Source of the DNA: Thecamonas trahens ATCC 50062
Lineage: Eukaryota; Protista; Apusomonadida
NCBI RefSeq assembly: GCF_000142905.1
Contig: NW_013657583.1
Span: forward strand, 1 to 8,845
Direction of reading: 5' to 3'
DNA: 8,845 nucleotides
Below are positions 998-8,845 of this stretch, piece after piece (within the stretch, counting starts at the first letter, position 1; every line of letters starts with the position of its first letter). The notes beneath the pieces are model-generated. The model was given only the letters and a program-made list of their open reading frames with translations, did not search any database and was not told the origin of the DNA. A program made the translations under genes and the position numbers.

Positions 998-1930
998 TTA
1001 TGGGTGGCGGCGGAGGATGATGGGGGGGCGGTTGGAGAATACGGTGAGGAGGCGGTTGGGGTCGGAGGGGTGGGGGATGGAGAGGCCGGTGTGGTTGGCA
1101 ATGGTGATGCGAGTGGAGTTGTTGCGTGGGTGGGTGGAGGTGGAGCAGAGGGCGTGGAGCGAAAAGGGGAGGGAGTGGCGGGCGTGGAGGGCGTAGCCGG
1201 TGGGGGAGGGGTGCCACTCGAACGTCTCGTCGGAATCTGAGTGGGAGGCCAGGACGGGCAGCTGGCCATCCGCACTCGGCAGCGCAATCACACCCCGCAC
1301 ACTGTAGGTGTGGCCCTCCAGCACCTCACAGGAGGCATTGTCCGCGGTGTACCGCATGGCACCCATCTCGTCGTCCGCAGCATGCCACACCCGGATCGTG
1401 TCTTCCCACGACCACGAGACCAGGACAGGCAGCTGGCCATCCGCACTCGGCAGCGCAATCACACCATGCACATCGTCGGTGTGGCCCTCCAGCACCTCAC
1501 AGGAGGCACTGTCCGCGGTGTACCGCATGGCGCCCATCCCGTCGTCCGCAGCATGCCACACCCGGATCGTCCTGTCCCGCGACCACGAGACCAGGACCGG
1601 CAGCTGGCCATCTGTACTCGGCAGCGCAATCACACCCTCCACACCGCTGGTGTGGCCCTCCAGCACCTCACAGGAGTCCCTGTCCGCGGTGTACCGCATG
1701 GCGCCCGTCCCGTCGTCCGCAGCATGCCACACCCGGATCGTACTGTCCCACGACCACGAGACCAGGACAGGCAGCTGGCCATCCGCACTCGGCAGCGCAA
1801 TCACACCCTCCACATCGTCGGTGTGGCTCTCCAGCACCTCACAGGAGGCACTGTCCGCGGTGTACCGCATGGCGCCCGTCCCGTCGTACGCAGCATGCCA
1901 CACCCGGATCGTGTTGTCTCTCTCGACCAC
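998..1930 (-). other. Out-of-frame C-terminal part of the NLR (WD40 units 13-17 plus unique tail)
   Basis: 310-aa ORF continues the same repeat in a different frame; not an independent gene. Confidence 0.85.
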
Positions 1931-4900
1931 GAGACCAGGACAGGCAGCTGGCCATCCGCACTCGGCAGCGCAATCACACCCTCCACACCGTAGATGTGGC
2001 CCACCAGCACCTCACAGGAGGCCCTGTCCGCGGTGTACCGCATGGCGCCCGTCCCGTCGTCCGCAGCATGCCACACCCGGATCGTCCTGTCCCACGACCA
2101 CGAGACCAGGACAGGCAGCTGGCCATCCGCACTTGGCAGCGCAATCACACCCTTCACATACTCGGTGTGGCCCTCCAGTACCTCACAGGAGGCACTGTCC
2201 GCGGTGTACCGCATGGCGCCCTCTCCGTCGTCGGCAGCATGCCACACCCGGATCGTCCTGTCCCACGACCACGAGACCAGGACAGGCAGCTGGCCATCCG
2301 CACTCGGCAGCGCAATCACACCCCGCACATACTCGGTGTGGCCCTCCAGCACCTCGCAGGAGGCATTGTCCGCGGTGTACCGCATGGCGCCCGTCCCGTC
2401 GTCTGCAGGATGCCACACCCGGATCGTCTTGTCGGCCGACCACGAGACCAGGACAGGCAGCTGGCCATCTGCACTCGGCAGCGCAATCACACCATGCACC
2501 CTGCTGGTGTGGCCCTCCAGCACCTCACAGGAGGCAGTGTCCGCGGTGTACCGCATGGCCTCCGTCCCGTCGTCCGCAGGATGCCACACCCGGATCGTCC
2601 TGTCTTCCGACCACGAGACCAGGACCGGCAGCTGGCTGTCCGCACTCGGCAGCGCAATCACACCCTGCACATCGCTGGTGTGGCCCTCCAGTACCTCACA
2701 GGAGGCACTGTCCGCGGTGTACCGCATGGCGCCCGTCCCGTCGTCCACAGGATGCCACACCCGGATCGTCTCGTCCTCCGACCACGAGACCAGGACAGGC
2801 AGCTGGCCATCCGCACTCGGCAGCACAATCACACCCCGCACCCTGCTGGTGTGGCCCTCCAGCACCTCACAGGAGGCATTGTCCGCGGTGTACCGCATGG
2901 CGCCCGTCCCGTCGTCCGCAGCATGCCACACCCGGATCGTCCTGTCCCACGACCACGAGACCAGGACAGGCAGCTGGCCATCCGCACTCGGCAGCGCAAT
3001 CACACCATGCACCCTGCTGGTGTGGCCCTCCAGCACCTCACAGGAGGCAGTGTCCGCGGTGTACCGCATGGCCTCCGTCCCGTCGTCCGCAGGATGCCAC
3101 ACCCGGATCGTCCTGTCCTCCGACCACGAGACCAGGANNNNNNNNNNNNNNNNNNNNNNNNNNNNNNNNNNNNNNNNNNNNNNNNNNNNNNNNNNNNNNN
3201 NNNNNNNNNNNNNNNNNNNNNNNNNNNNNNNNNNNNNNNNNNNNNNNNNNNNNNNNNNNNNNNNNNNNNNNNNNNNNNNNNNNNNNNNNNNNNNNNNNNN
3301 NNNNNNNNNNNNNNNNNNNNNNNNNNNNNNNNNNNNNNNNNNNNNNNNNNNNNNNNNNNNNNNNNNNNNNNNNNNNNNNNNNNNNNNNNNNNNNNNNNNN
3401 NNNNNNNNNNNNNNNNNNNNNNNNNNNNNNNNNNNNNNNNNNNNNNNNNNNNNNNNNNNNNNNNNNNNNNNNNNNNNNNNNNNNNNNNNNNNNNNNNNNN
3501 NNNNNNNCGCAATCACACCCCGCACACTGTTGGTGTGGCCCTCCAGCACCTCGCAGGAGGCAGTGTCCGCGGTGTACCGCATGGCCTCCGTCCCGTCGTC
3601 CGCAGGATGCCACACCCGAATCGTGTTGTCCCACGACCACGAGACCAGGACAGGCAGCTGGCCATCCGCACTCGGCAGCGCAATCACACCATGCACCCTG
3701 CTGGTGTGGCCCTCCAGCACCTCACAGGAGGCATTGTCCGCGGTGTACCGCATGGCGCCCGTCCCGTCGTCCGCAGCATGCCACACCCGGATCGTCCTGT
3801 CCCACGACCACGAGACCAGGACAGGCAGCTGGCCATCCGCACTCGGCAGCGCAATCACACCCTCCACATCGTCGGTGTGGCCCTCCAGCACCTCGCAGGA
3901 GGCAGTGTCCGCGGTGTACCGCATGGCCTCCGTCCCGTCGTCCGCAGGATGCCACACCCGGATCGTGTTGTCCCCCGACCACGAGACCAGGACAGGCAGC
4001 TGGCCATCCGCACTCGGCAGCGCAATCACACCCCGCACACTGTTGGTGTGGCCCTCCAGCACCTCCACGCGTTCACCAGTTTGCACGTCCAGTACGTCCA
4101 CATTCTTCCAACATCCACCAGCAACCAGCGAGCCACTGATGTTGATGACATTGCCGGACGAGCCATCAAAGCGAAAGCGCTCAGCACCACGATGCGCAAC
4201 AGGGTCCACAGCTCTCGATGGAATGAGAGCCCCAGACGGGACATCTTCGCTCACAGCAGCAACCAGGTCCTTCACCGCTTTGGACGCGTTGTTATAGGCA
4301 AGTCGCGCAACGAGCTCGGTTTCGATTTGCGACTTGCCCTTCTCAATGATGTCGCGTGAGAGCGACAGCGCACGCTCGACCTCGTCAACGTCTTTGGCTC
4401 CTTCACATCCGAGGCGCACAACACAACGCAGATCGTTGAGGAGGCCACTAAGCGAGTCGTTTGCGCGGGCTTTCATCCATGGCCAGGAGAGAGCAACCGC
4501 AACGGCGGCATGGTTCGCTCCGGCTGCAATCATGTGCGAAATACCGTGGGTGACGATCCAGTCGGAGGCAGTATCAGATGTCATGGCCTTCGCAGCGGTA
4601 TGCGGCGTGGCGCCAGACGGAGGCAGCCCGGCGACAACGGCGAGATGACGGGCAGGAAGGGAAGGGATGTCGTCAAAGCATACCTCAAGCTGATGGCGAA
4701 TGTACTCGAGGTGCAGATCGTGCATCTCGATTACGGTTATGGCCCCGCCATCCGTGGCAACGACGCGCAGCAACGACGTGTTGGCGAGGGCATCGAGGGA
4801 CCTAGCAAACTTGATATTGCTTGCGTCGATCGCGGAGCGGAAGTTGGCGACGTCGATGGGCGCGTCTGATGGAAAGACGGCGAGCATGGCGTAAATAGTC

Positions 4901-6606
4901 AGCGCCACCTTGCGGACACGCTTGGGGATGGCACCGCTGAGGGTCCAAGTGATGATGTCAAAGATGCGGGCGTACTTGGCGTCCGATCCGCCGCAATCAT
5001 CGCGGTGCTCATCCATGGCAAGCTCAGTTGCATCTGCAGCGTCCTCAACAGCGTCGTCAAGCGCAGCCTCGCCAGAAATGGACGAGCCAAGGACGGCGAG
5101 GGCGAGGGCATGGCCACGGCAAAAGGTCGCGAGGGAGACGATGCGGGAATCGTTGAGAGCAAGGGTGTTTGCCCACTCAGGTGAGCCCTTGGCGAGGTAG
5201 TTGCGAAGGACAACAGCAGCGTCGTCCGGGCCAAAGGTGCCAAGCTTGATGGAGGAGGTGGTGTTGGTAGCAACAGCGGCGTTGCGCGAGGTGACGAGGA
5301 TGGCATGCGGGGCTGCGATGTGGTTGGTGAAGACGGAGGCCTGGCGGGTGGTCCACGCATCGTCGAGGATGAGCAGGATGCGGGTGCCGGCGGCGGCAAG
5401 GGACCGGGTCTTGGCAGCAAGGATACGTTGGAGGTCGTCGAGGTTGGCCTGAGTATCGACTGTGCAGCTCAGACCCTGCTTGAGAAAGTAAGACATGCGG
5501 CTGGTAAGAGCTGGGTTGGACGTATTGTCCTCACCAAGCGAGAGCCAGAAGACGGAGAAGACCGAAGTAATGGCGGGATGGATGGCGACATCGGCAGCGA
5601 GTGACGACTTGCCGACGCCACCGAGCCCGTTGACACCGACGACTGAGACGTTGTTCGCACCAAGAAGGACATTAATGACCGCATCACGAGTGTCAGGGAG
5701 CGGGTGGTATTCGGGTGGATTGAATGGCGGCGGCATGAGTAAAGGCAAACGCTCAATAGAGCAAGAGTCGCGCAAGACAGCGACGACAGCGTCTGCAACG
5801 CGGGAGACGAGATCGGAAAAGCTGTCGTGGCCGTTACGGTCGCCCTGGACGCACCCCCACTCAGGCAGCGAGTGTATGAGCTTGACTCGTTCACAGCGCG
5901 AGGAGTACCATGCTTTCACGTTCAGGTCCTCAGAGTGTTCAGCCTTGTGGACAGCACCCTTGGCGTGAGCAAGATCACCAAAGGCAGCGATAAGGTCAGG
6001 GCCAATCCAAGCCTTAGCCTGCTCCTCATGCACGGCGCCGGTGACACGCTCAATGACGTCGGCATCAGCGAGCCGGGCATCCCCCCAAACGCTATTGAAC
6101 GGCAAGGCTTCATGCATGAAGACAGGGATGATGACGGGGTTATTGTCGAGGGCAAAGCGCACCTCTTCCATGGCAAAGCCCGAGGCGAGGAGATAGGGCG
6201 AGACTGAAATAACAATGATGCGTGAGCCCTCAAGTAGGGCATGCACGTCGTCCATGCCACTGCACCTGACGCCGAACCAGTCCAGCCTGTCCACAAACGC
6301 CCTGACACCACGTCGTAAGAGCTCCCGCCGAACGTCGATCATGAAAGCCTTGTCGTGCGAGCCATGCGCGAGAAATACGTCATACTTCTTGATGGGGGGC
6401 GGCTTGATCGTAGAAGATGGAGCGGCTGGTGACGATGACGTCGCTTCAATTTGCATGTTCTGAGGGACTGCGGAGGAAGGGGTGGCCGAGCTGGCCGAGC
6501 TGGCGTTGGCGGGGGGGTGCGGGCGGGGGCGCTTGGCAGAACCCTGCTGCACTGGTGCGTGTGCAGGGCGCGGGGGGTCCCCTGTGTCCCCTGGGGCGGG
6601 GTCCAT
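998..6606 (-). CDS. TIR - NB-ARC - WD40-repeat STAND/NLR-like protein (about 1868 aa if frame is restored; as given, frameshifted at 1917-1924 and ending at the 1801 stop, about 1601 aa)
   Basis: ORFs 1801..6963 and 998..1930 join once 2 extra bases are removed. Motifs in order: TIR YDVFLAH...AFVD...IPVF; Walker A GLGGVGKS; Walker B ILLILDDAW; ILVTSR; CRGHALAL; MHD; GH...SxDxTIRVW repeats; TAA at 998-1000. Start chosen at ATG 6606 (MDPAPG) because the upstream in-frame stretch looks non-coding. Confidence 0.9.
1250..4065 (-). repeat. Tandem array of 171-bp units encoding 57-aa WD40 repeats (15 unit starts visible, 17 if gap size is right)
   Basis: Anchor gtggccctcc (EGH) or a one-base variant at 1310, 1481, 1652, 1823, 1996, 2167, 2338, 2509, 2680, 2851, 3022, 3535, 3706, 3877, 4048. 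Spacing is 171 except 173 (frameshift) and 513 across the gap. Confidence 0.97.
3138..3507. other. Assembly gap / undetermined bases (370 N)
   Basis: Run of N inside the repeat array. Confidence 0.99.
4200..4699 (-). other. Apaf-1-like helical domain/linker between NB-ARC and WD40
   Basis: WIVTHGISHMIAAG...VALSWPWMKAR...LLNDL resembles the post-MHD helical region of Apaf-1-type NB-ARC-WD40 proteins; position fits. Confidence 0.55.
4700..5700 (-). other. NB-ARC (AP-ATPase) domain with winged helix
   Basis: VVGVNGLGGVGKS (P-loop 5605-5628), VFWLSLG (RNBS-A-like), ILLILDDAW (5353-5379), ILVTSR (5284-5301), CRGHALAL (GLPL-like, GHAL at 5104-5115), LAVFPSD (RNBS-D-like), MHD (4717-4725). Boundaries approximate. 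Confidence 0.92.
5770..6387 (-). other. TIR domain
   Basis: KYDVFLAHGSHDKAFMIDVRRELLRRGVRAFVD (betaA-alphaA-betaB), IIVISVSPYLLASGFAMEEVRFAL (betaC/alphaC; Glu at 6163-6165 aligns with SxWCxxEL), VIIPVF (betaD), DLVSRVADAVVAVL (alphaE). Boundaries approximate. Confidence 0.88.
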
Positions 6607-7262
6607 GGGCACAGTGAGAGGTGTGCGGAGTGTGCGTTGCGTGTGACGGCGAGGGCGACAGTCGGCATTTGGGCGATTTTTTGGATATCGGGCGAGTGCC
6701 GGGGGAAGGGCCGGGGGAGAAGGTATGATTATTTCAATGAGAGTTAATTGATGGGGATGGGCATGATTAGTTGAACGAGAAATGATTGATGTGGCGATGG
6801 TGGGGCCAGGGGGGGTGCATGCAAGCAAGAAGGGTGTGTAGTTGGGCAAAAAGAAGAAAGAATGCGTTACTCGGTATTCCCGTGTGGTCCCCCACCACAG
6901 TACTAACCAAGCCTCATGCTGCTTGACTTCCGAGAGCGAGACGGGATCGGGTATTTTCAGCATAGGATGAACGCATTCGCTGTAAGAGTGTGCGTGTGGT
7001 AGTCATGTGGTGGAGGGCGAGGGCGCAGAGCGGTCGCAGAATGGGTTCCGACCAGGAGATGGCGATCGGGTGATTGAGGCAAGATGTGGCTGCTTCCGGC
7101 GCGATGCGGCTGTGAGTGGACTCTGATCTGTGAGTGGAATAGAGGTGCTTGCATTGCTGAGTCTCACCTTGTTCGGTTCCTTCTCTGCGATGTGGCGAGA
7201 ACCACAGCTCGCCGACGTCCACGGCCTCCGTACGTACATGCACAACTGCGCTGACAACCATC

Positions 7263-7580
7263 ATGGACTTTGAATCTCAAGGTCACCTCGGCTTTGTTGA
7301 CTCGATCGAGGATGCGCTCGAGACGCTTCCGGAGAGCCCGGCCGTTACCTTCTCCAACAACGTCTACGGCGTTTGGCGCGGTAGCGATCAGACGGCCGAC
7401 GGCGTTGTGGCTGCGGTGGCGTACAAGCGCCGCGACCTTGTGGCGATCAAGGTCGGTGGCTGCCCAAACGACAAGAACATCACTAGCAAGGCGTTGATTG
7501 CCATCGGCGGGTCATGCACCTTGCTCAAGTTGGTGGATGCATCGAGAACCGTGGCTGTGACCGACCAGTGGCCAGGGTGA
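7263..7580 (+). CDS. Hypothetical protein or gene fragment (105 aa)
   Basis: ATG in accATCATGG context, many G/C-ending codons, ordinary globular composition; no family recognised. Confidence 0.3.
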   Translation: MDFESQGHLGFVDSIEDALETLPESPAVTFSNNVYGVWRGSDQTADGVVAAVAYKRRDLVAIKVGGCPNDKNITSKALIAIGGSCTLLKLVDASRTVAVTDQWPG

Positions 7581-8845
7581 GGGAGCGATCGGCCAGTCGT
7601 ATGCAAGTTGAGATGGCGATGGAAGGCAGGCATCAGCTTTGTTGAGTGCACAGTGGGGGTTCATGGCAGCCAGCTCGCCGACGAGGGATCTGCGGTCGTC
7701 CGACTTGGGGGAGGTGAGGCCCATGGGACCGGGGTCGTTTGTGGTTGGCTTTCTAGCGTCGGCCTTGGGGGCGTCGGATGGGTGGCTGAGAAGGCGATTG
7801 GAGGCCGAGGCGAAGGTGAGGTGGTAGATCGAGCTGGAGAGGATGTCCAGCATACGTGTGTGTGTGCGTGGGCCGTGTGCTCGTTTGCTGGGAGCTGGCA
7901 CGGCATGTGTGGCTCGGGTGTGGCGATGGGAGAGGGGATGGCTGGGGTCCGACTGAGGCATGGATGTGGTGAGAGCGTGCGCGATCTGGCGACGACGAGT
8001 CTGTTGAGGGGTGATGGCATGTGCTCGCTGTCGTCGAGCAACCCGATGTCCCATTCGTCTGGGCGGAGCAGGTCAGGGCTTTGTTGCTTCCGCTGTTAGC
8101 TTGATAGCGAGCTGGAACCGCAGCGCGTTTTTGACGAAGGACGACGACGTTGCATCGACCACCAGGGCGGTGGTGTCCAGGCTGCTGTGCGGCTGTGGTG
8201 GACGGGCGTGGTCGGCTTGTTGTTTGCCCAGCCCATGAACGGCGTGGCAGTCGTCATGCCAGCGGTAACGTCGGCGAGGAGGACGATGGGGCTGGTGTCA
8301 GCAGCACTCGGCTGCGAGCGAGGGTGGGGTCGGCATGCGCAACGCCTCGATGGCAGAGATCAGAGATCAGATTGCGGCCGCGGGGCCATGATGCGTGTGC
8401 GGGTGGCGGCGATGAGGACAACGAGCGAGGGACATGGGTGGGGTTGGCAAGGTACGTCGTTGTCAGGCAGAGGTAGCACGACACCCAGCAAAGAAGAGCT
8501 GGCCGGCTGACCTCGCTTGATCGAGGACGATCCGGAGGACTGGCTGAGGCGGTGGGCAACTGTGGGGGAGATCGGGATAAAGGAGGACAGAGTGTTAATG
8601 CGCGATGAGGGGTGATTGGATTGCAAGGGACGGCGCGGGTGGGCATGGTTTGTTGCGCAGCAGCAGGTGATGGGGTTGATGGGATGGATGGTCGGGCGTG
8701 GTGGTTGCAGGAGAGCGATGACGGTTGTGTGGCGGATGTGCGAGGCATAGTTGTGCTCGGCGCATGTGTCTGGGTCTCATCTTCAGCAGCTGGAGGGCGC
8801 AGGCAGCGCCATCTGGCAATGTGTGGATGGCAGGCAGGTTGGGGC

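What the first reader, a model, noticed from the sequence alone, without database searches (positions are those of the whole stretch)
1290..4050. Variation concentrated at five codons predicted on the propeller top face
Seen, N to C. GHT-xx-V-x: NS/R, DD/E, SR/H, NS/R, (gap), SR/H, SR/R, SD/Q, SR/H, EY/R, EY/K, YG/E, DD/E, SG/E, DD/H, YS/R. SWS-xDx: GDN, WDR, WDN, (gap), EDR, WDR, EDE, EDR, ADK, WDR, WDR, RDN, WDS, RDR, WED. Changes are non-synonymous, often multi-nucleotide and charge-reversing, while the scaffold shows few differences even at silent sites. Known: equivalent positions form the ligand-binding face of WD40 propellers and are positively selected in fungal HNWD repeats. Inference: a modular specificity code under diversifying selection.
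Basis: partly seen in the sequence, partly recalled or inferred. Interest (0 to 1): 0.82.

Follow-up and report, generated by a model that had tools for sequence, protein, structure and literature searches.

The report
Hypervariable WD40 repeats in protist NLR
The window holds one NLR-like gene (TIR, NB-ARC, WD40) of the flagellate Thecamonas trahens. Its roughly 17 near-identical 57-residue WD40 repeats differ mainly at five codons on the predicted ligand-binding loops, as in fungal non-self-recognition genes. This copy also has an unread gap and a 2-base frameshift.

Summary
The gene lies on the minus strand of Thecamonas trahens scaffold GL349529.1, which is not human.

- **Repeats.** The array has 171-nt (57-aa) WD40 units that are 87% identical in protein.
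- **Concentration.** 52% of all differences between units fall in codons 5, 6, 8, 28 and 30, which are 8.8% of the unit.
- **Selection.** Replacement divergence at these codons (pN 0.52) far exceeds silent divergence of the scaffold (pS 0.066). With a shared silent rate, site omega is 4.9-11 in the window and 2.2-7.4 with separate trees over 42 units from six loci. The scaffold omega is 0.22-0.35.
- **Independent check.** The same codons are the most variable in five paralogous loci.
- **Structure.** In a confident AlphaFold model, codons 5, 6 and 8 lie at the d-a loop and the start of strand a. Codons 28 and 30 lie in the b-c turn. These are the positions reported as selected in Podospora HNWD genes.

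The gap is in frame and exactly in register as written. Verdict: a new member of a known kind, a highly-internally-conserved-repeat NLR, in an apusomonad.

The parts
998..6456 (-). Whole gene as I read it, TIR - NB-ARC - WD40 array. The probable start ATG is at 6456. The stop at 998-1000 is reached only in the frame that follows the 2-nt insertion. The uninterrupted ORF 6963->1801 stops at 1801-1803.
   Evidence: ORF list and translations. M170 of the long ORF aligns with Met1 of paralog P0005. The annotated model P0001 covers 1288..6255.
6100..6378 (-). TIR domain. The glutamate in 'AMEEV' aligns with the Glu of 'WCLDEL' in the Arabidopsis TIR structure 3JRN.
   Evidence: Pfam TIR_2 38 bits (cut-off 28) and TIR 22.2 bits (cut-off 21.3). 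PDB alignment to 3jrn_A, E = 6.6e-5.
5741..6409 (-). Divergent N-terminal cassette (TIR plus linker). It has no nucleotide similarity to the paralogs, although both flanks are 86-97% identical to them.
   Evidence: blastn of the window against L001-L005. At least three TIR types occur in the family.
5068..5688 (-). NB-ARC NTPase domain. It carries a P-loop (GGVGKS), a Walker B motif (LLILDDAW), and further downstream an MHD motif at 4717-4725.
   Evidence: Pfam NB-ARC 60.7 bits (cut-off 23.5). Motifs were read in the translation.
4057..4248 (-). Degenerate first blade that precedes the regular array. It is conserved among the paralogs.
   Evidence: Translations of the six loci.
3508..4056 (-). 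WD40 array, units 1-3 and the first 12 codons of unit 4. Unit starts are at 4056, 3885, 3714 and 3543. Codon k of a unit runs from start-3(k-1) down to start-3(k-1)-2. Hypervariable codons are k = 5, 6, 8, 28 and 30, plus 51.
   Evidence: Pfam WD40 65.8 bits.
3138..3507 (.). Assembly gap of 370 N. As written it is in frame and in register (28 + 2 x 171 nt). It hides the rest of unit 4, all of unit 5 and the first 21 codons of unit 6.
1924..3137 (-). WD40 array: the end of unit 6, units 7-12 and the first 27 codons of unit 13. Unit starts are at 3030, 2859, 2688, 2517, 2346, 2175 and 2004. This stretch was folded.
   Evidence: Pfam WD40 104.9 bits. AlphaFold2 pLDDT 86.5. Foldseek matches 7- and 8-bladed WD40 propellers.
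1916..1923 (-). Two extra bases at codons 28-29 of unit 13 (AGAGAGAC where other units have TGGGAC). They shift the frame. The premature stop follows at 1801-1803.
   Evidence: The anchor spacing is 173 instead of 171. Sequence.
1319..1915 (-). The rest of unit 13 and units 14-16, readable only in the shifted frame. Unit starts are at 1831, 1660 and 1489. They show the same hypervariable codons but an excess of scaffold replacements.
   Evidence: Departures from the unit consensus are 2 silent to 10 replacement here, against 13 to 4 upstream.
998..1318 (-). Terminal partial unit (strands a and b) and a conserved C-terminal tail (ETFEWHPSPTGY...) shared with paralog L004.

Best explanation
The window is a single gene of a Thecamonas trahens family of NLR-like STAND receptors. 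Each has an N-terminal TIR effector domain, a central NB-ARC switch and a C-terminal sensor made of highly internally conserved WD40 repeats.

Shown:
- The repeats are 57-residue WD40 blades. They match a canonical blade plus 4 residues in the a-b loop and an 11-residue insert between strands c and d.
- Their scaffolds are kept almost identical within the gene and between paralogous loci.
- Five codons per blade, in the d-a loop and start of strand a and in the b-c turn, carry half of all differences and change faster than silent sites.

Inferred:
- These residues tile the top face of one or two propellers and set what the receptor binds.
- Unit duplication, loss and exchange within and between loci (concerted evolution) keeps the scaffold uniform and reshuffles blades. 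Diversifying selection retains new residue combinations. All 12 complete units in the window carry a distinct five-residue combination, and 39 combinations occur among the 42 pooled units.
- Ligand binding would release NB-ARC autoinhibition, drive oligomerisation and bring the TIR domains together. The putative catalytic Glu is present, so the likely output is NAD+ cleavage and a cell-death or defence response to non-self (a virus, a bacterium or a conspecific).

This particular copy is incompletely read because of the gap. It also carries a 2-nt frameshift in unit 13, which is either a recent lesion or a sequencing error.
For: - Architecture: Pfam TIR_2, NB-ARC and WD40 all score above their cut-offs. 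P-loop, Walker B and MHD motifs are read in the sequence. The TIR Glu aligns with plant TIR 3JRN.
- Source and family: at least 10 Thecamonas paralogs.
- Internal conservation: 87% protein identity among units.
- Concentration and selection.
- Replication: the same five codons top the entropy ranking in five other loci, and their replacement excess holds there with the sites fixed beforehand.
- Structure.
- Exchange between loci: scaffold nucleotide identity is 96.3% within the window and 94-96% between loci. Some units are 100% identical across scaffolds. The full combination SDQER occurs in three loci, and the triplets SDQ, DDE, EYR, SRR and DDW are each shared between two or three loci.
- GC3 is 0.81-0.83 in the array against 0.66-0.69 in the rest of the gene, as GC-biased conversion would give.
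- Positional match with the Podospora HNWD selected codons (PMC1805685).
- The same variable positions appear in HIC WD40 arrays of a pelagophyte and of metagenomic NB-ARC-WD40 proteins.
Against: - A FEL-type test with site-specific silent rates reaches p < 0.05 for only one of the five codons, and codon 28 gave a degenerate fit. The strong results assume one silent rate for all sites.
- Conversion may reset scaffold dS, so omega here measures diversity held against homogenisation rather than a substitution rate.
- The top-face position rests on strand topology, not on coordinates.
- Only one genome, one strain and no reads are available. No independent fragments of this array were found.
- This copy has a frameshift and relaxed-looking 3' units.
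- No ligand, expression or function data exist.
- Codons 51 and 37 also vary and lie off that face.
Confidence: 0.75

Rival explanations
1. Relaxed constraint only. The five positions are exposed loop residues that tolerate any amino acid and drift neutrally, without selection for diversity.
For: They lie in loops and turns. Per-site FEL is mostly non-significant. Codons 51 and 37 behave like weakly constrained sites (omega about 2, p 0.03-0.08).
Against: Neutral sites cannot exceed the silent rate, yet the replacement rate at the five codons is 3-6x (event lower bound) to 13x (NG86 dN 0.90 against dS 0.069) the scaffold silent rate. Homogenisation of whole units would erase neutral differences along with the scaffold, yet all 12 complete window units are distinct. 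Silent sites in the adjacent codons 7, 9, 27 and 31 are invariant.
Confidence: 0.08
2. Assembly artefact. Reads from many paralogous arrays were collapsed or mis-joined, so the variants or their order are not those of a real gene.
For: The scaffold is an 8.8-kb orphan with an internal gap. Paralogs sit at scaffold ends and carry gaps. Units are up to 100% identical between loci. There is a frameshift and a cluster of odd replacements in units 13-16.
Against: Errors would be spread evenly, whereas 52% of differences hit the same 15 of 171 nucleotides in six separately assembled loci. Mis-joining can reorder units but cannot create codon-specific variation. Register and frame are kept over 14 anchors.
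Confidence: 0.07
3. Directed diversification. A mutational or micro-conversion mechanism aimed at these codons, rather than selection on random mutations, generates the variation.
For: Changes are often multi-nucleotide. Variation is confined to single codons with invariant neighbours. A limited set of residue triplets and pairs recurs in new combinations across loci.
Against: No reverse transcriptase or template repeat is present on the scaffold. There is no base-specific signature at the variable codons. No such mechanism is known for eukaryotic nuclear genes (my knowledge). Selection plus unit shuffling explains the same pattern in fungi.
Confidence: 0.05
4. This copy is a pseudogene. The pattern is inherited from functional relatives, and the window's gene itself no longer makes a full receptor.
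For: A 2-nt insertion at 1916-1923 leads to a stop at 1801-1803. From unit 13 on, scaffold changes are 10 replacement to 2 silent, against 4 to 13 upstream (p = 0.0025).
Against: The shifted frame stays open for 306 further codons to the conserved tail. 3'-terminal units of intact-looking paralogs (L003, L004) also carry extra replacements, which suggests an edge effect. AGAGAG is slippage-prone, and a read error cannot be excluded. This rival concerns the state of the copy, not the nature of the feature.
Confidence: 0.35

Closest known systems
Fungal NWD/HNWD genes of Podospora anserina (het-e, het-d, het-r): NACHT-WD40 NLRs with highly internally conserved repeats
   Same: Tandem WD40 units are about 85-90% identical. 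The scaffold is homogenised within and between paralogs. Variation is confined to pairs of codons that flank a conserved residue, in the d-a loop and the b-c turn, with dN/dS > 1. Nearly every unit carries a unique residue combination (PMC1805685; PMC4986451).
   Different: The window's gene has NB-ARC instead of NACHT and TIR instead of HET. Its units are 57 residues rather than 42, with an extra insert between strands c and d. A third variable codon (5) lies beside the first pair. The host is an apusomonad flagellate, not a fungus. RIP is not known there. Allelic variation and function are untested.
Highly repetitive WD40 proteins of bacteria and protists (Hu et al. 2017; Nostoc 2YMU; PkwA 5YZV) and bacterial NB-ARC/NACHT-WD NLR-like proteins
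   Same: The blade subtype is the same (GHT..V.G...LPDG..LSWS.D.T.R.W). PkwA is the best solved sequence match and 2YMU is among the fold matches. Metagenomic and bacterial NB-ARC-WD40 proteins vary at the same positions.
   Different: Those proteins have 40-46-residue units and mostly no TIR. No selection analysis of the Thecamonas family turned up in the searchable library.
Plant TNL immune receptors (TIR-NB-ARC-LRR)
   Same: Both have a TIR plus NB-ARC with an MHD motif. The TIR is closest in sequence to the Arabidopsis TIR 3JRN, with the Glu conserved. Both have a sensor repeat domain under diversifying selection.
   Different: The sensor is a WD40 propeller, not LRR. No orthology is implied, because NB-ARC identity outside Thecamonas is 26% or less.
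Apaf-1 / CED-4 type NB-ARC-WD40 apoptosome proteins
   Same: NB-ARC is followed by WD40 propellers that act as the ligand sensor.
   Different: Apaf-1 blades are divergent from one another and are not hypervariable. Its effector is CARD, not TIR.

Membership tests
NLR-like STAND receptor (effector - NB-ARC - repeats) | Central NB-ARC/NACHT NTPase with P-loop, Walker B and MHD-type sensor motif | tested here: met
   Pfam NB-ARC 60.7 bits against a cut-off of 23.5. GGVGKS, LLILDDAW and MHD were read in the translation.
NLR-like STAND receptor (effector - NB-ARC - repeats) | N-terminal effector or signalling domain | tested here: met
   TIR_2 38 bits (cut-off 28). The domain aligns to plant TIR 3JRN with the motif Glu conserved. 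Catalysis was not tested.
NLR-like STAND receptor (effector - NB-ARC - repeats) | C-terminal superstructure-forming repeat domain | tested here: met
   WD40 scores 65.8 and 104.9 bits. The propeller model has pTM 0.88.
Highly internally conserved (HIC) repeat NLRs | Units at least 85% identical over at least 100 residues (criterion of Dyrka et al. 2014) | tested here: met
   Mean pairwise identity is 87.2% over 12 units of 57 aa. The criterion was read.
Highly internally conserved (HIC) repeat NLRs | Variation restricted to a few codons with dN/dS > 1 on the predicted binding surface | tested here: met
   omega 2.2-11; d-a loop and b-c turn. The surface is inferred from topology. The per-site-alpha FEL result is weak.
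Highly internally conserved (HIC) repeat NLRs | Concerted evolution, with units exchanged within and between paralogs | tested here: inconclusive
   Scaffold identity between loci (94-96%) is about the same as within the gene (96%). Identical scaffolds and shared residue combinations occur across loci. However, NB-ARC dS between paralogs is also low (0.07-0.34), so a young family is not excluded.
Highly internally conserved (HIC) repeat NLRs | Repeat-number and repeat-content polymorphism between individuals | not testable with these tools
   Only one strain's assembly exists here. Paralogs differ in unit number, roughly 4 to 14 per locus against about 17 in the window.
Podospora HNWD family proper | HET effector domain plus NACHT NTPase | tested here: not met
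   The gene has TIR and NB-ARC instead. NACHT scores 19.7 bits, below its cut-off of 26.7. It works like the HNWD family but is not a member.
Ribosome assembly protein 4 (Rsa4), the name in the public annotation | N-terminal UBL/NLE domain plus a single 8-bladed WD40 with divergent blades | tested here: not met
   No such domain was found. TIR and NB-ARC are present instead. The resemblance is only the propeller fold.

The most novel reading that the evidence does not exclude
The five codons per blade are diversified by a directed mechanism, either codon-scale micro-conversion from the pool of roughly a hundred blades in the family or targeted mutagenesis. A unicellular flagellate would then actively generate receptor diversity rather than merely retain it by selection. 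The exchangeable TIR cassette would add a second, effector-level layer of modularity.
Probability: 0.05. Interest if true: 0.9.

Novelty: new member of a known kind. Interest (0 to 1): 0.5.

Why it matters
Highly internally conserved repeats with hypervariable contact residues are the hallmark of fungal allorecognition and immune NLRs, and they have been noted in bacterial NLR-like proteins. This finding shows the same regime, at the same blade positions, in an apusomonad. Apusomonads are usually placed next to animals and fungi (my knowledge). The gene here combines it with a plant-like TIR effector.

Two readings follow. Either this way of building a fast-evolving receptor repertoire is old and widespread, or it is easily re-invented. 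Either way, a unicellular predator of bacteria appears to invest in diversified intracellular non-self sensing.

There is also a practical lesson. The public gene model is wrong: it is named 'ribosome assembly protein 4', its TIR is cut off, and invented introns span the gap and the frameshift. Such families break short-read-era assemblies, so surveys of protist immunity will undercount them.

Tried and rejected
- **Plus-strand ORFs.** The plus-strand ORFs over the array (1126-4359 and others) are mirror-image artefacts of the GC-rich repeat.
- **Flanking ORFs.** ORFs in 1-1020 and 6914-8748 have no Pfam match, and there are no tRNAs.
- **FEL with per-site silent rates.** It was underpowered, with only 0.3-0.5 silent sites per variable codon, and gave a degenerate fit at codon 28. 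I replaced it with a shared-silent-rate test and a tree-free event count.
- **Independent evidence for this array.** I looked for short protein fragments from other datasets and found none.
- **Missing paralog records.** Look-ups for paralogs P0002 and P0003 found no record.
- **Literature.** Searches for Thecamonas or apusomonads together with NLR, NB-ARC or TIR terms found nothing relevant.
- **3-D mapping.** Mapping by coordinates was not possible because the structure tool returns only secondary structure and confidence.
- **Handling of breaks.** The two codons at the frameshift were masked with N in scripts, and the pieces were searched separately.
- **Rsa4 annotation.** I rejected the annotated 'Rsa4' identity.
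- **Diversity-generating retroelement.** Rejected, because there is no reverse transcriptase, no template repeat and no adenine-specific pattern.
Full report
**Source and gene.** The window is the whole 8,845-bp scaffold GL349529.1 of Thecamonas trahens ATCC 50062 (GCA_000142905.1), an apusomonad flagellate. It is not human. It holds one gene, on the minus strand.

The longest ORF runs from 6963 to 1801. Its translation has three parts:
- a TIR domain (Pfam TIR_2, 38 bits);
- an NB-ARC domain (60.7 bits), with a GGVGKS P-loop, LLILDDAW Walker B and an MHD motif;
- a long array of WD40 repeats.

The probable start is the ATG at 6456, which aligns with Met1 of paralog P0005. The plus-strand ORFs across the array are mirror artefacts. 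The flanks hold no recognisable gene or tRNA.

**Gap and frame, tested first.**
- The repeat period is 171 nt. A 15-nt anchor recurs every 171 nt at 3990, 3819 and 3648, then at 3135 and onward to 1938.
- Across the gap the anchors are 513 = 3 x 171 nt apart. As written, the 370 N therefore keep both the reading frame and the repeat register. They hide codons 13-57 of unit 4, all of unit 5 and codons 1-21 of unit 6.
- The gap length is only an estimate, so the real number of hidden units is unknown. Both flanks do belong to the same array on the same strand.
- One spacing is 173 nt (1938 to 1765). Unit 13 reads AGAGAGAC at 1916-1923 where other units have a 6-nt xDx start. The two extra bases shift the frame, and the ORF ends at 1801-1803. 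In the shifted frame the array continues without stops through units 14-16, a terminal partial unit and a conserved tail, to a stop at 998-1000.
- The public protein model P0001 (1,489 aa, named 'ribosome assembly protein 4') has four faults. It begins at an internal Met and loses most of the TIR. It jumps the gap and the frameshift with invented introns. It ends in an out-of-frame stop.
The two codons at the frameshift were masked and the pieces were searched separately.

**The observation.**
- Twelve complete units are on average 87.2% identical in protein and 91.8% in DNA.
- Codons 5, 6, 8, 28 and 30 of the unit (E1-G2-H3-T4-x5-x6-V7-x8 ... S27-x28-D29-x30) hold 52% of all pairwise amino-acid and nucleotide differences, against 8.8% expected.
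- They carry 4-6 different residues each, including charge reversals, and unit pairs differ there by 1.3-1.6 nucleotides per codon.

**Selection.** I pooled 42 intact 171-nt units from the window and five paralogous loci (L001-L005).

| Test | Result at the five codons |
|---|---|
| Nei-Gojobori, window | pN 0.52 (dN 0.90) against scaffold pS 0.066 (dS 0.069); scaffold pN/pS 0.42 |
| Same five codons (plus 51) in the paralogs | Most variable there too; per-codon entropies correlate (Spearman 0.56) |
| Tree-free lower bound on mutation events (minimum spanning tree of codon states per column, valid under free recombination between codons) | Replacement rate 5.6x the scaffold silent rate in the window (p = 4.5e-6, sites chosen post hoc); 3.1x in the paralogs with sites fixed beforehand (p = 2e-7) |
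| Site likelihood-ratio tests, MG94-type model, one silent rate | Omega 4.9-11.2 in the window (p 2e-6 to 2.5e-3); 2.2-7.4 with separate trees for codons 1-19, 20-40 and 41-57 over all 42 units; scaffold omega 0.22-0.35 |
| FEL-type test with per-site silent rates | Underpowered; significant only for codons 6, 37 and 51, and degenerate at codon 28 |

Codon 51 (omega 1.9-3.3, p about 0.03, not significant with its own tree) and codon 37 (omega about 2) are compatible with weak constraint.

One caveat applies to all of these. If conversion keeps resetting the scaffold, omega measures diversity held against homogenisation rather than a substitution rate. That is still diversifying selection. Silent sites in the codons next to the variable ones are invariant, so old linked haplotypes are unlikely.

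**Structure.** A seven-unit stretch (1924-3135) was folded with a 25-sequence alignment and gave pLDDT 86.5 and pTM 0.88. Per unit the elements are:
- strand a, positions 7-13;
- strand b, positions 22-27;
- a tight turn, positions 28-31;
- strand c, positions 32-35, continued at 37-39;
- an extra short strand, positions 45-47;
- strand d, positions 54-57.

Thus codons 5 and 6 sit in the d-a loop, codon 8 is the second residue of strand a, and codons 28 and 30 flank the conserved Asp of the b-c turn. Foldseek finds 7- and 8-bladed WD40 propellers, including the highly repetitive Nostoc protein 2YMU and Rsa4, which explains the misnomer. The best solved sequence match is bacterial PkwA. That alignment shows the unit is a canonical blade plus 4 residues in the a-b loop and an 11-residue insert between c and d, and the insert contains codon 51.

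Paoletti et al. 2007 place the selected Podospora codons 7/9 and 25/27 in the d-a loop and the b-c turn, each pair around a conserved residue, on the top of the propeller (PMC1805685). The five codons here are their positional equivalents. No coordinates are returned by the tools, so 'top face' is an inference from topology and not a measurement.

**Family behaviour.**
- At least ten Thecamonas proteins share the architecture. Most of the fetched loci lie at scaffold ends or carry gaps.
- Unit scaffolds, with the six variable codons removed, are 96.3% identical within the window and 94-96% between loci (83% for L005). Units W_4961 and W_5816 are 100% identical to a unit of L002.
- The 42 units show 39 different five-residue combinations, and all 12 in the window are distinct. 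Triplets at 5/6/8 and pairs at 28/30 recur in new combinations within and between loci. Indels occur at the b-c turn.
- GC3 is 0.81-0.83 in the array against 0.66-0.69 elsewhere in the gene.
- These points fit unit shuffling with GC-biased conversion. However, NB-ARC dS between paralogs is also low (0.07-0.34), so a young family is not excluded.
- Outside Thecamonas the NB-ARC part has only distant relatives (26% identity or less). HIC WD40 arrays with the same variable positions occur in the pelagophyte Chrysophaeum taylorii (46-residue units) and in metagenomic NB-ARC-WD40 proteins.

**Interpretation.** The best reading is an NLR-like receptor whose propeller top face is a modular, fast-diversifying binding surface, coupled through an NB-ARC switch to a TIR effector. 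The TIR's motif glutamate aligns with that of plant TIR 3JRN. The steps from binding to TIR activation, and any role in defence or allorecognition, are inferred from plant, fungal and bacterial systems and were not tested.

**State of this copy.** From unit 13 on, scaffold departures from the unit consensus are 10 replacement to 2 silent, against 4 to 13 upstream (p = 0.0025). Three explanations fit:
- a real frameshift with decay of the 3' units;
- poorer sequence quality;
- the usual divergence of terminal repeats, which the paralogs L003 and L004 also show.

**Novelty.** HIC repeats under diversifying selection are established for fungal NLRs (PMC1805685; PMC4986451). They have been noted for bacterial NLR-like proteins (bioRxiv 10.1101/2020.01.06.895854). 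Highly repetitive WD40 proteins were catalogued in prokaryotes, protists and fungi (PMC5587647). I found no paper that links Thecamonas or apusomonads with NLR-like genes. The finding is therefore a new member of a known kind, with a distinct architecture (TIR-NB-ARC, 57-residue blades) and host lineage. It is not a member of the HNWD family itself, because HET and NACHT are absent.

Noticed in passing
window 5741-6409 (-), flanked by 6410-8238 and by 5740 downward: The TIR-plus-linker coding segment has no nucleotide similarity to any paralog. The 5' flank with the first 15 codons is 86-94% identical to L001, L003 and L004, and the NB-ARC onward is also close. At least three discrete TIR types sit between the same flanks in the family, so the effector looks like an exchangeable cassette.
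   Followed up: partly
window 1319-2004 (-), units 13-16: Scaffold departures from the unit consensus switch from 13 silent : 4 replacement upstream to 2 silent : 10 replacement from the frameshifted unit onward (Fisher p = 0.0025). This could be decay after a real frameshift, lower sequence quality or a terminal-repeat edge effect.
   Followed up: partly
window 1288-6255 (-), public model P0001: The annotated protein ('ribosome assembly protein 4') starts at an internal Met inside the TIR. It bridges the gap and the frameshift with invented introns and ends at an out-of-frame stop ('...NASLCGV').
   Followed up: yes
window 1319-4056 against 4249-6456: Third-position GC is 0.81-0.83 in the repeat array but 0.66-0.69 in the TIR and NB-ARC parts of the same gene. 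This is a possible footprint of GC-biased gene conversion in the array.
   Followed up: partly
window 998-1318 (-); L004:6954-7193: A conserved C-terminal cap follows the last regular unit in at least two paralogs. It has strands a and b of a blade, then 'ETFEWHPSPTGY.LHA...TRITIANHTG'. It may close the propeller together with the degenerate first blade (4057-4248).
   Followed up: no
L001-L005 (scaffolds GL349491, GL349502, GL349496, GL349471, GL349449): All five fetched paralogs lie within about 20 kb of a scaffold end, and three carry N gaps. The family either breaks the assembly or is clustered near chromosome ends. In L002 a second TIR-like start follows directly after the array, so P0007 (2,359 aa) may be two genes fused by annotation.
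   Followed up: no
window 3138-3507: The 370-N gap preserves the 171-nt register exactly, which has a 1-in-171 chance for an arbitrary estimate. Other gaps in the paralog arrays do not (a 100-N gap in L004 gives a 262-nt anchor spacing). The gap size here may derive from an alignment rather than from a read-pair estimate.
   Followed up: partly
P0015 (Chrysophaeum taylorii), P0016 and P0021 (metagenomes): Unrelated organisms have HIC WD40 arrays of 40-46-residue units in which the residues after GH(T/S) and around the turn Asp are likewise the variable ones. The regime appears widespread beyond fungi.
   Followed up: partly
window 6725-6800: A 38-nt tandem duplication (2 copies, 78% matches) lies upstream of the probable start codon, inside the 5' region that is conserved among the paralogs.
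   Followed up: no
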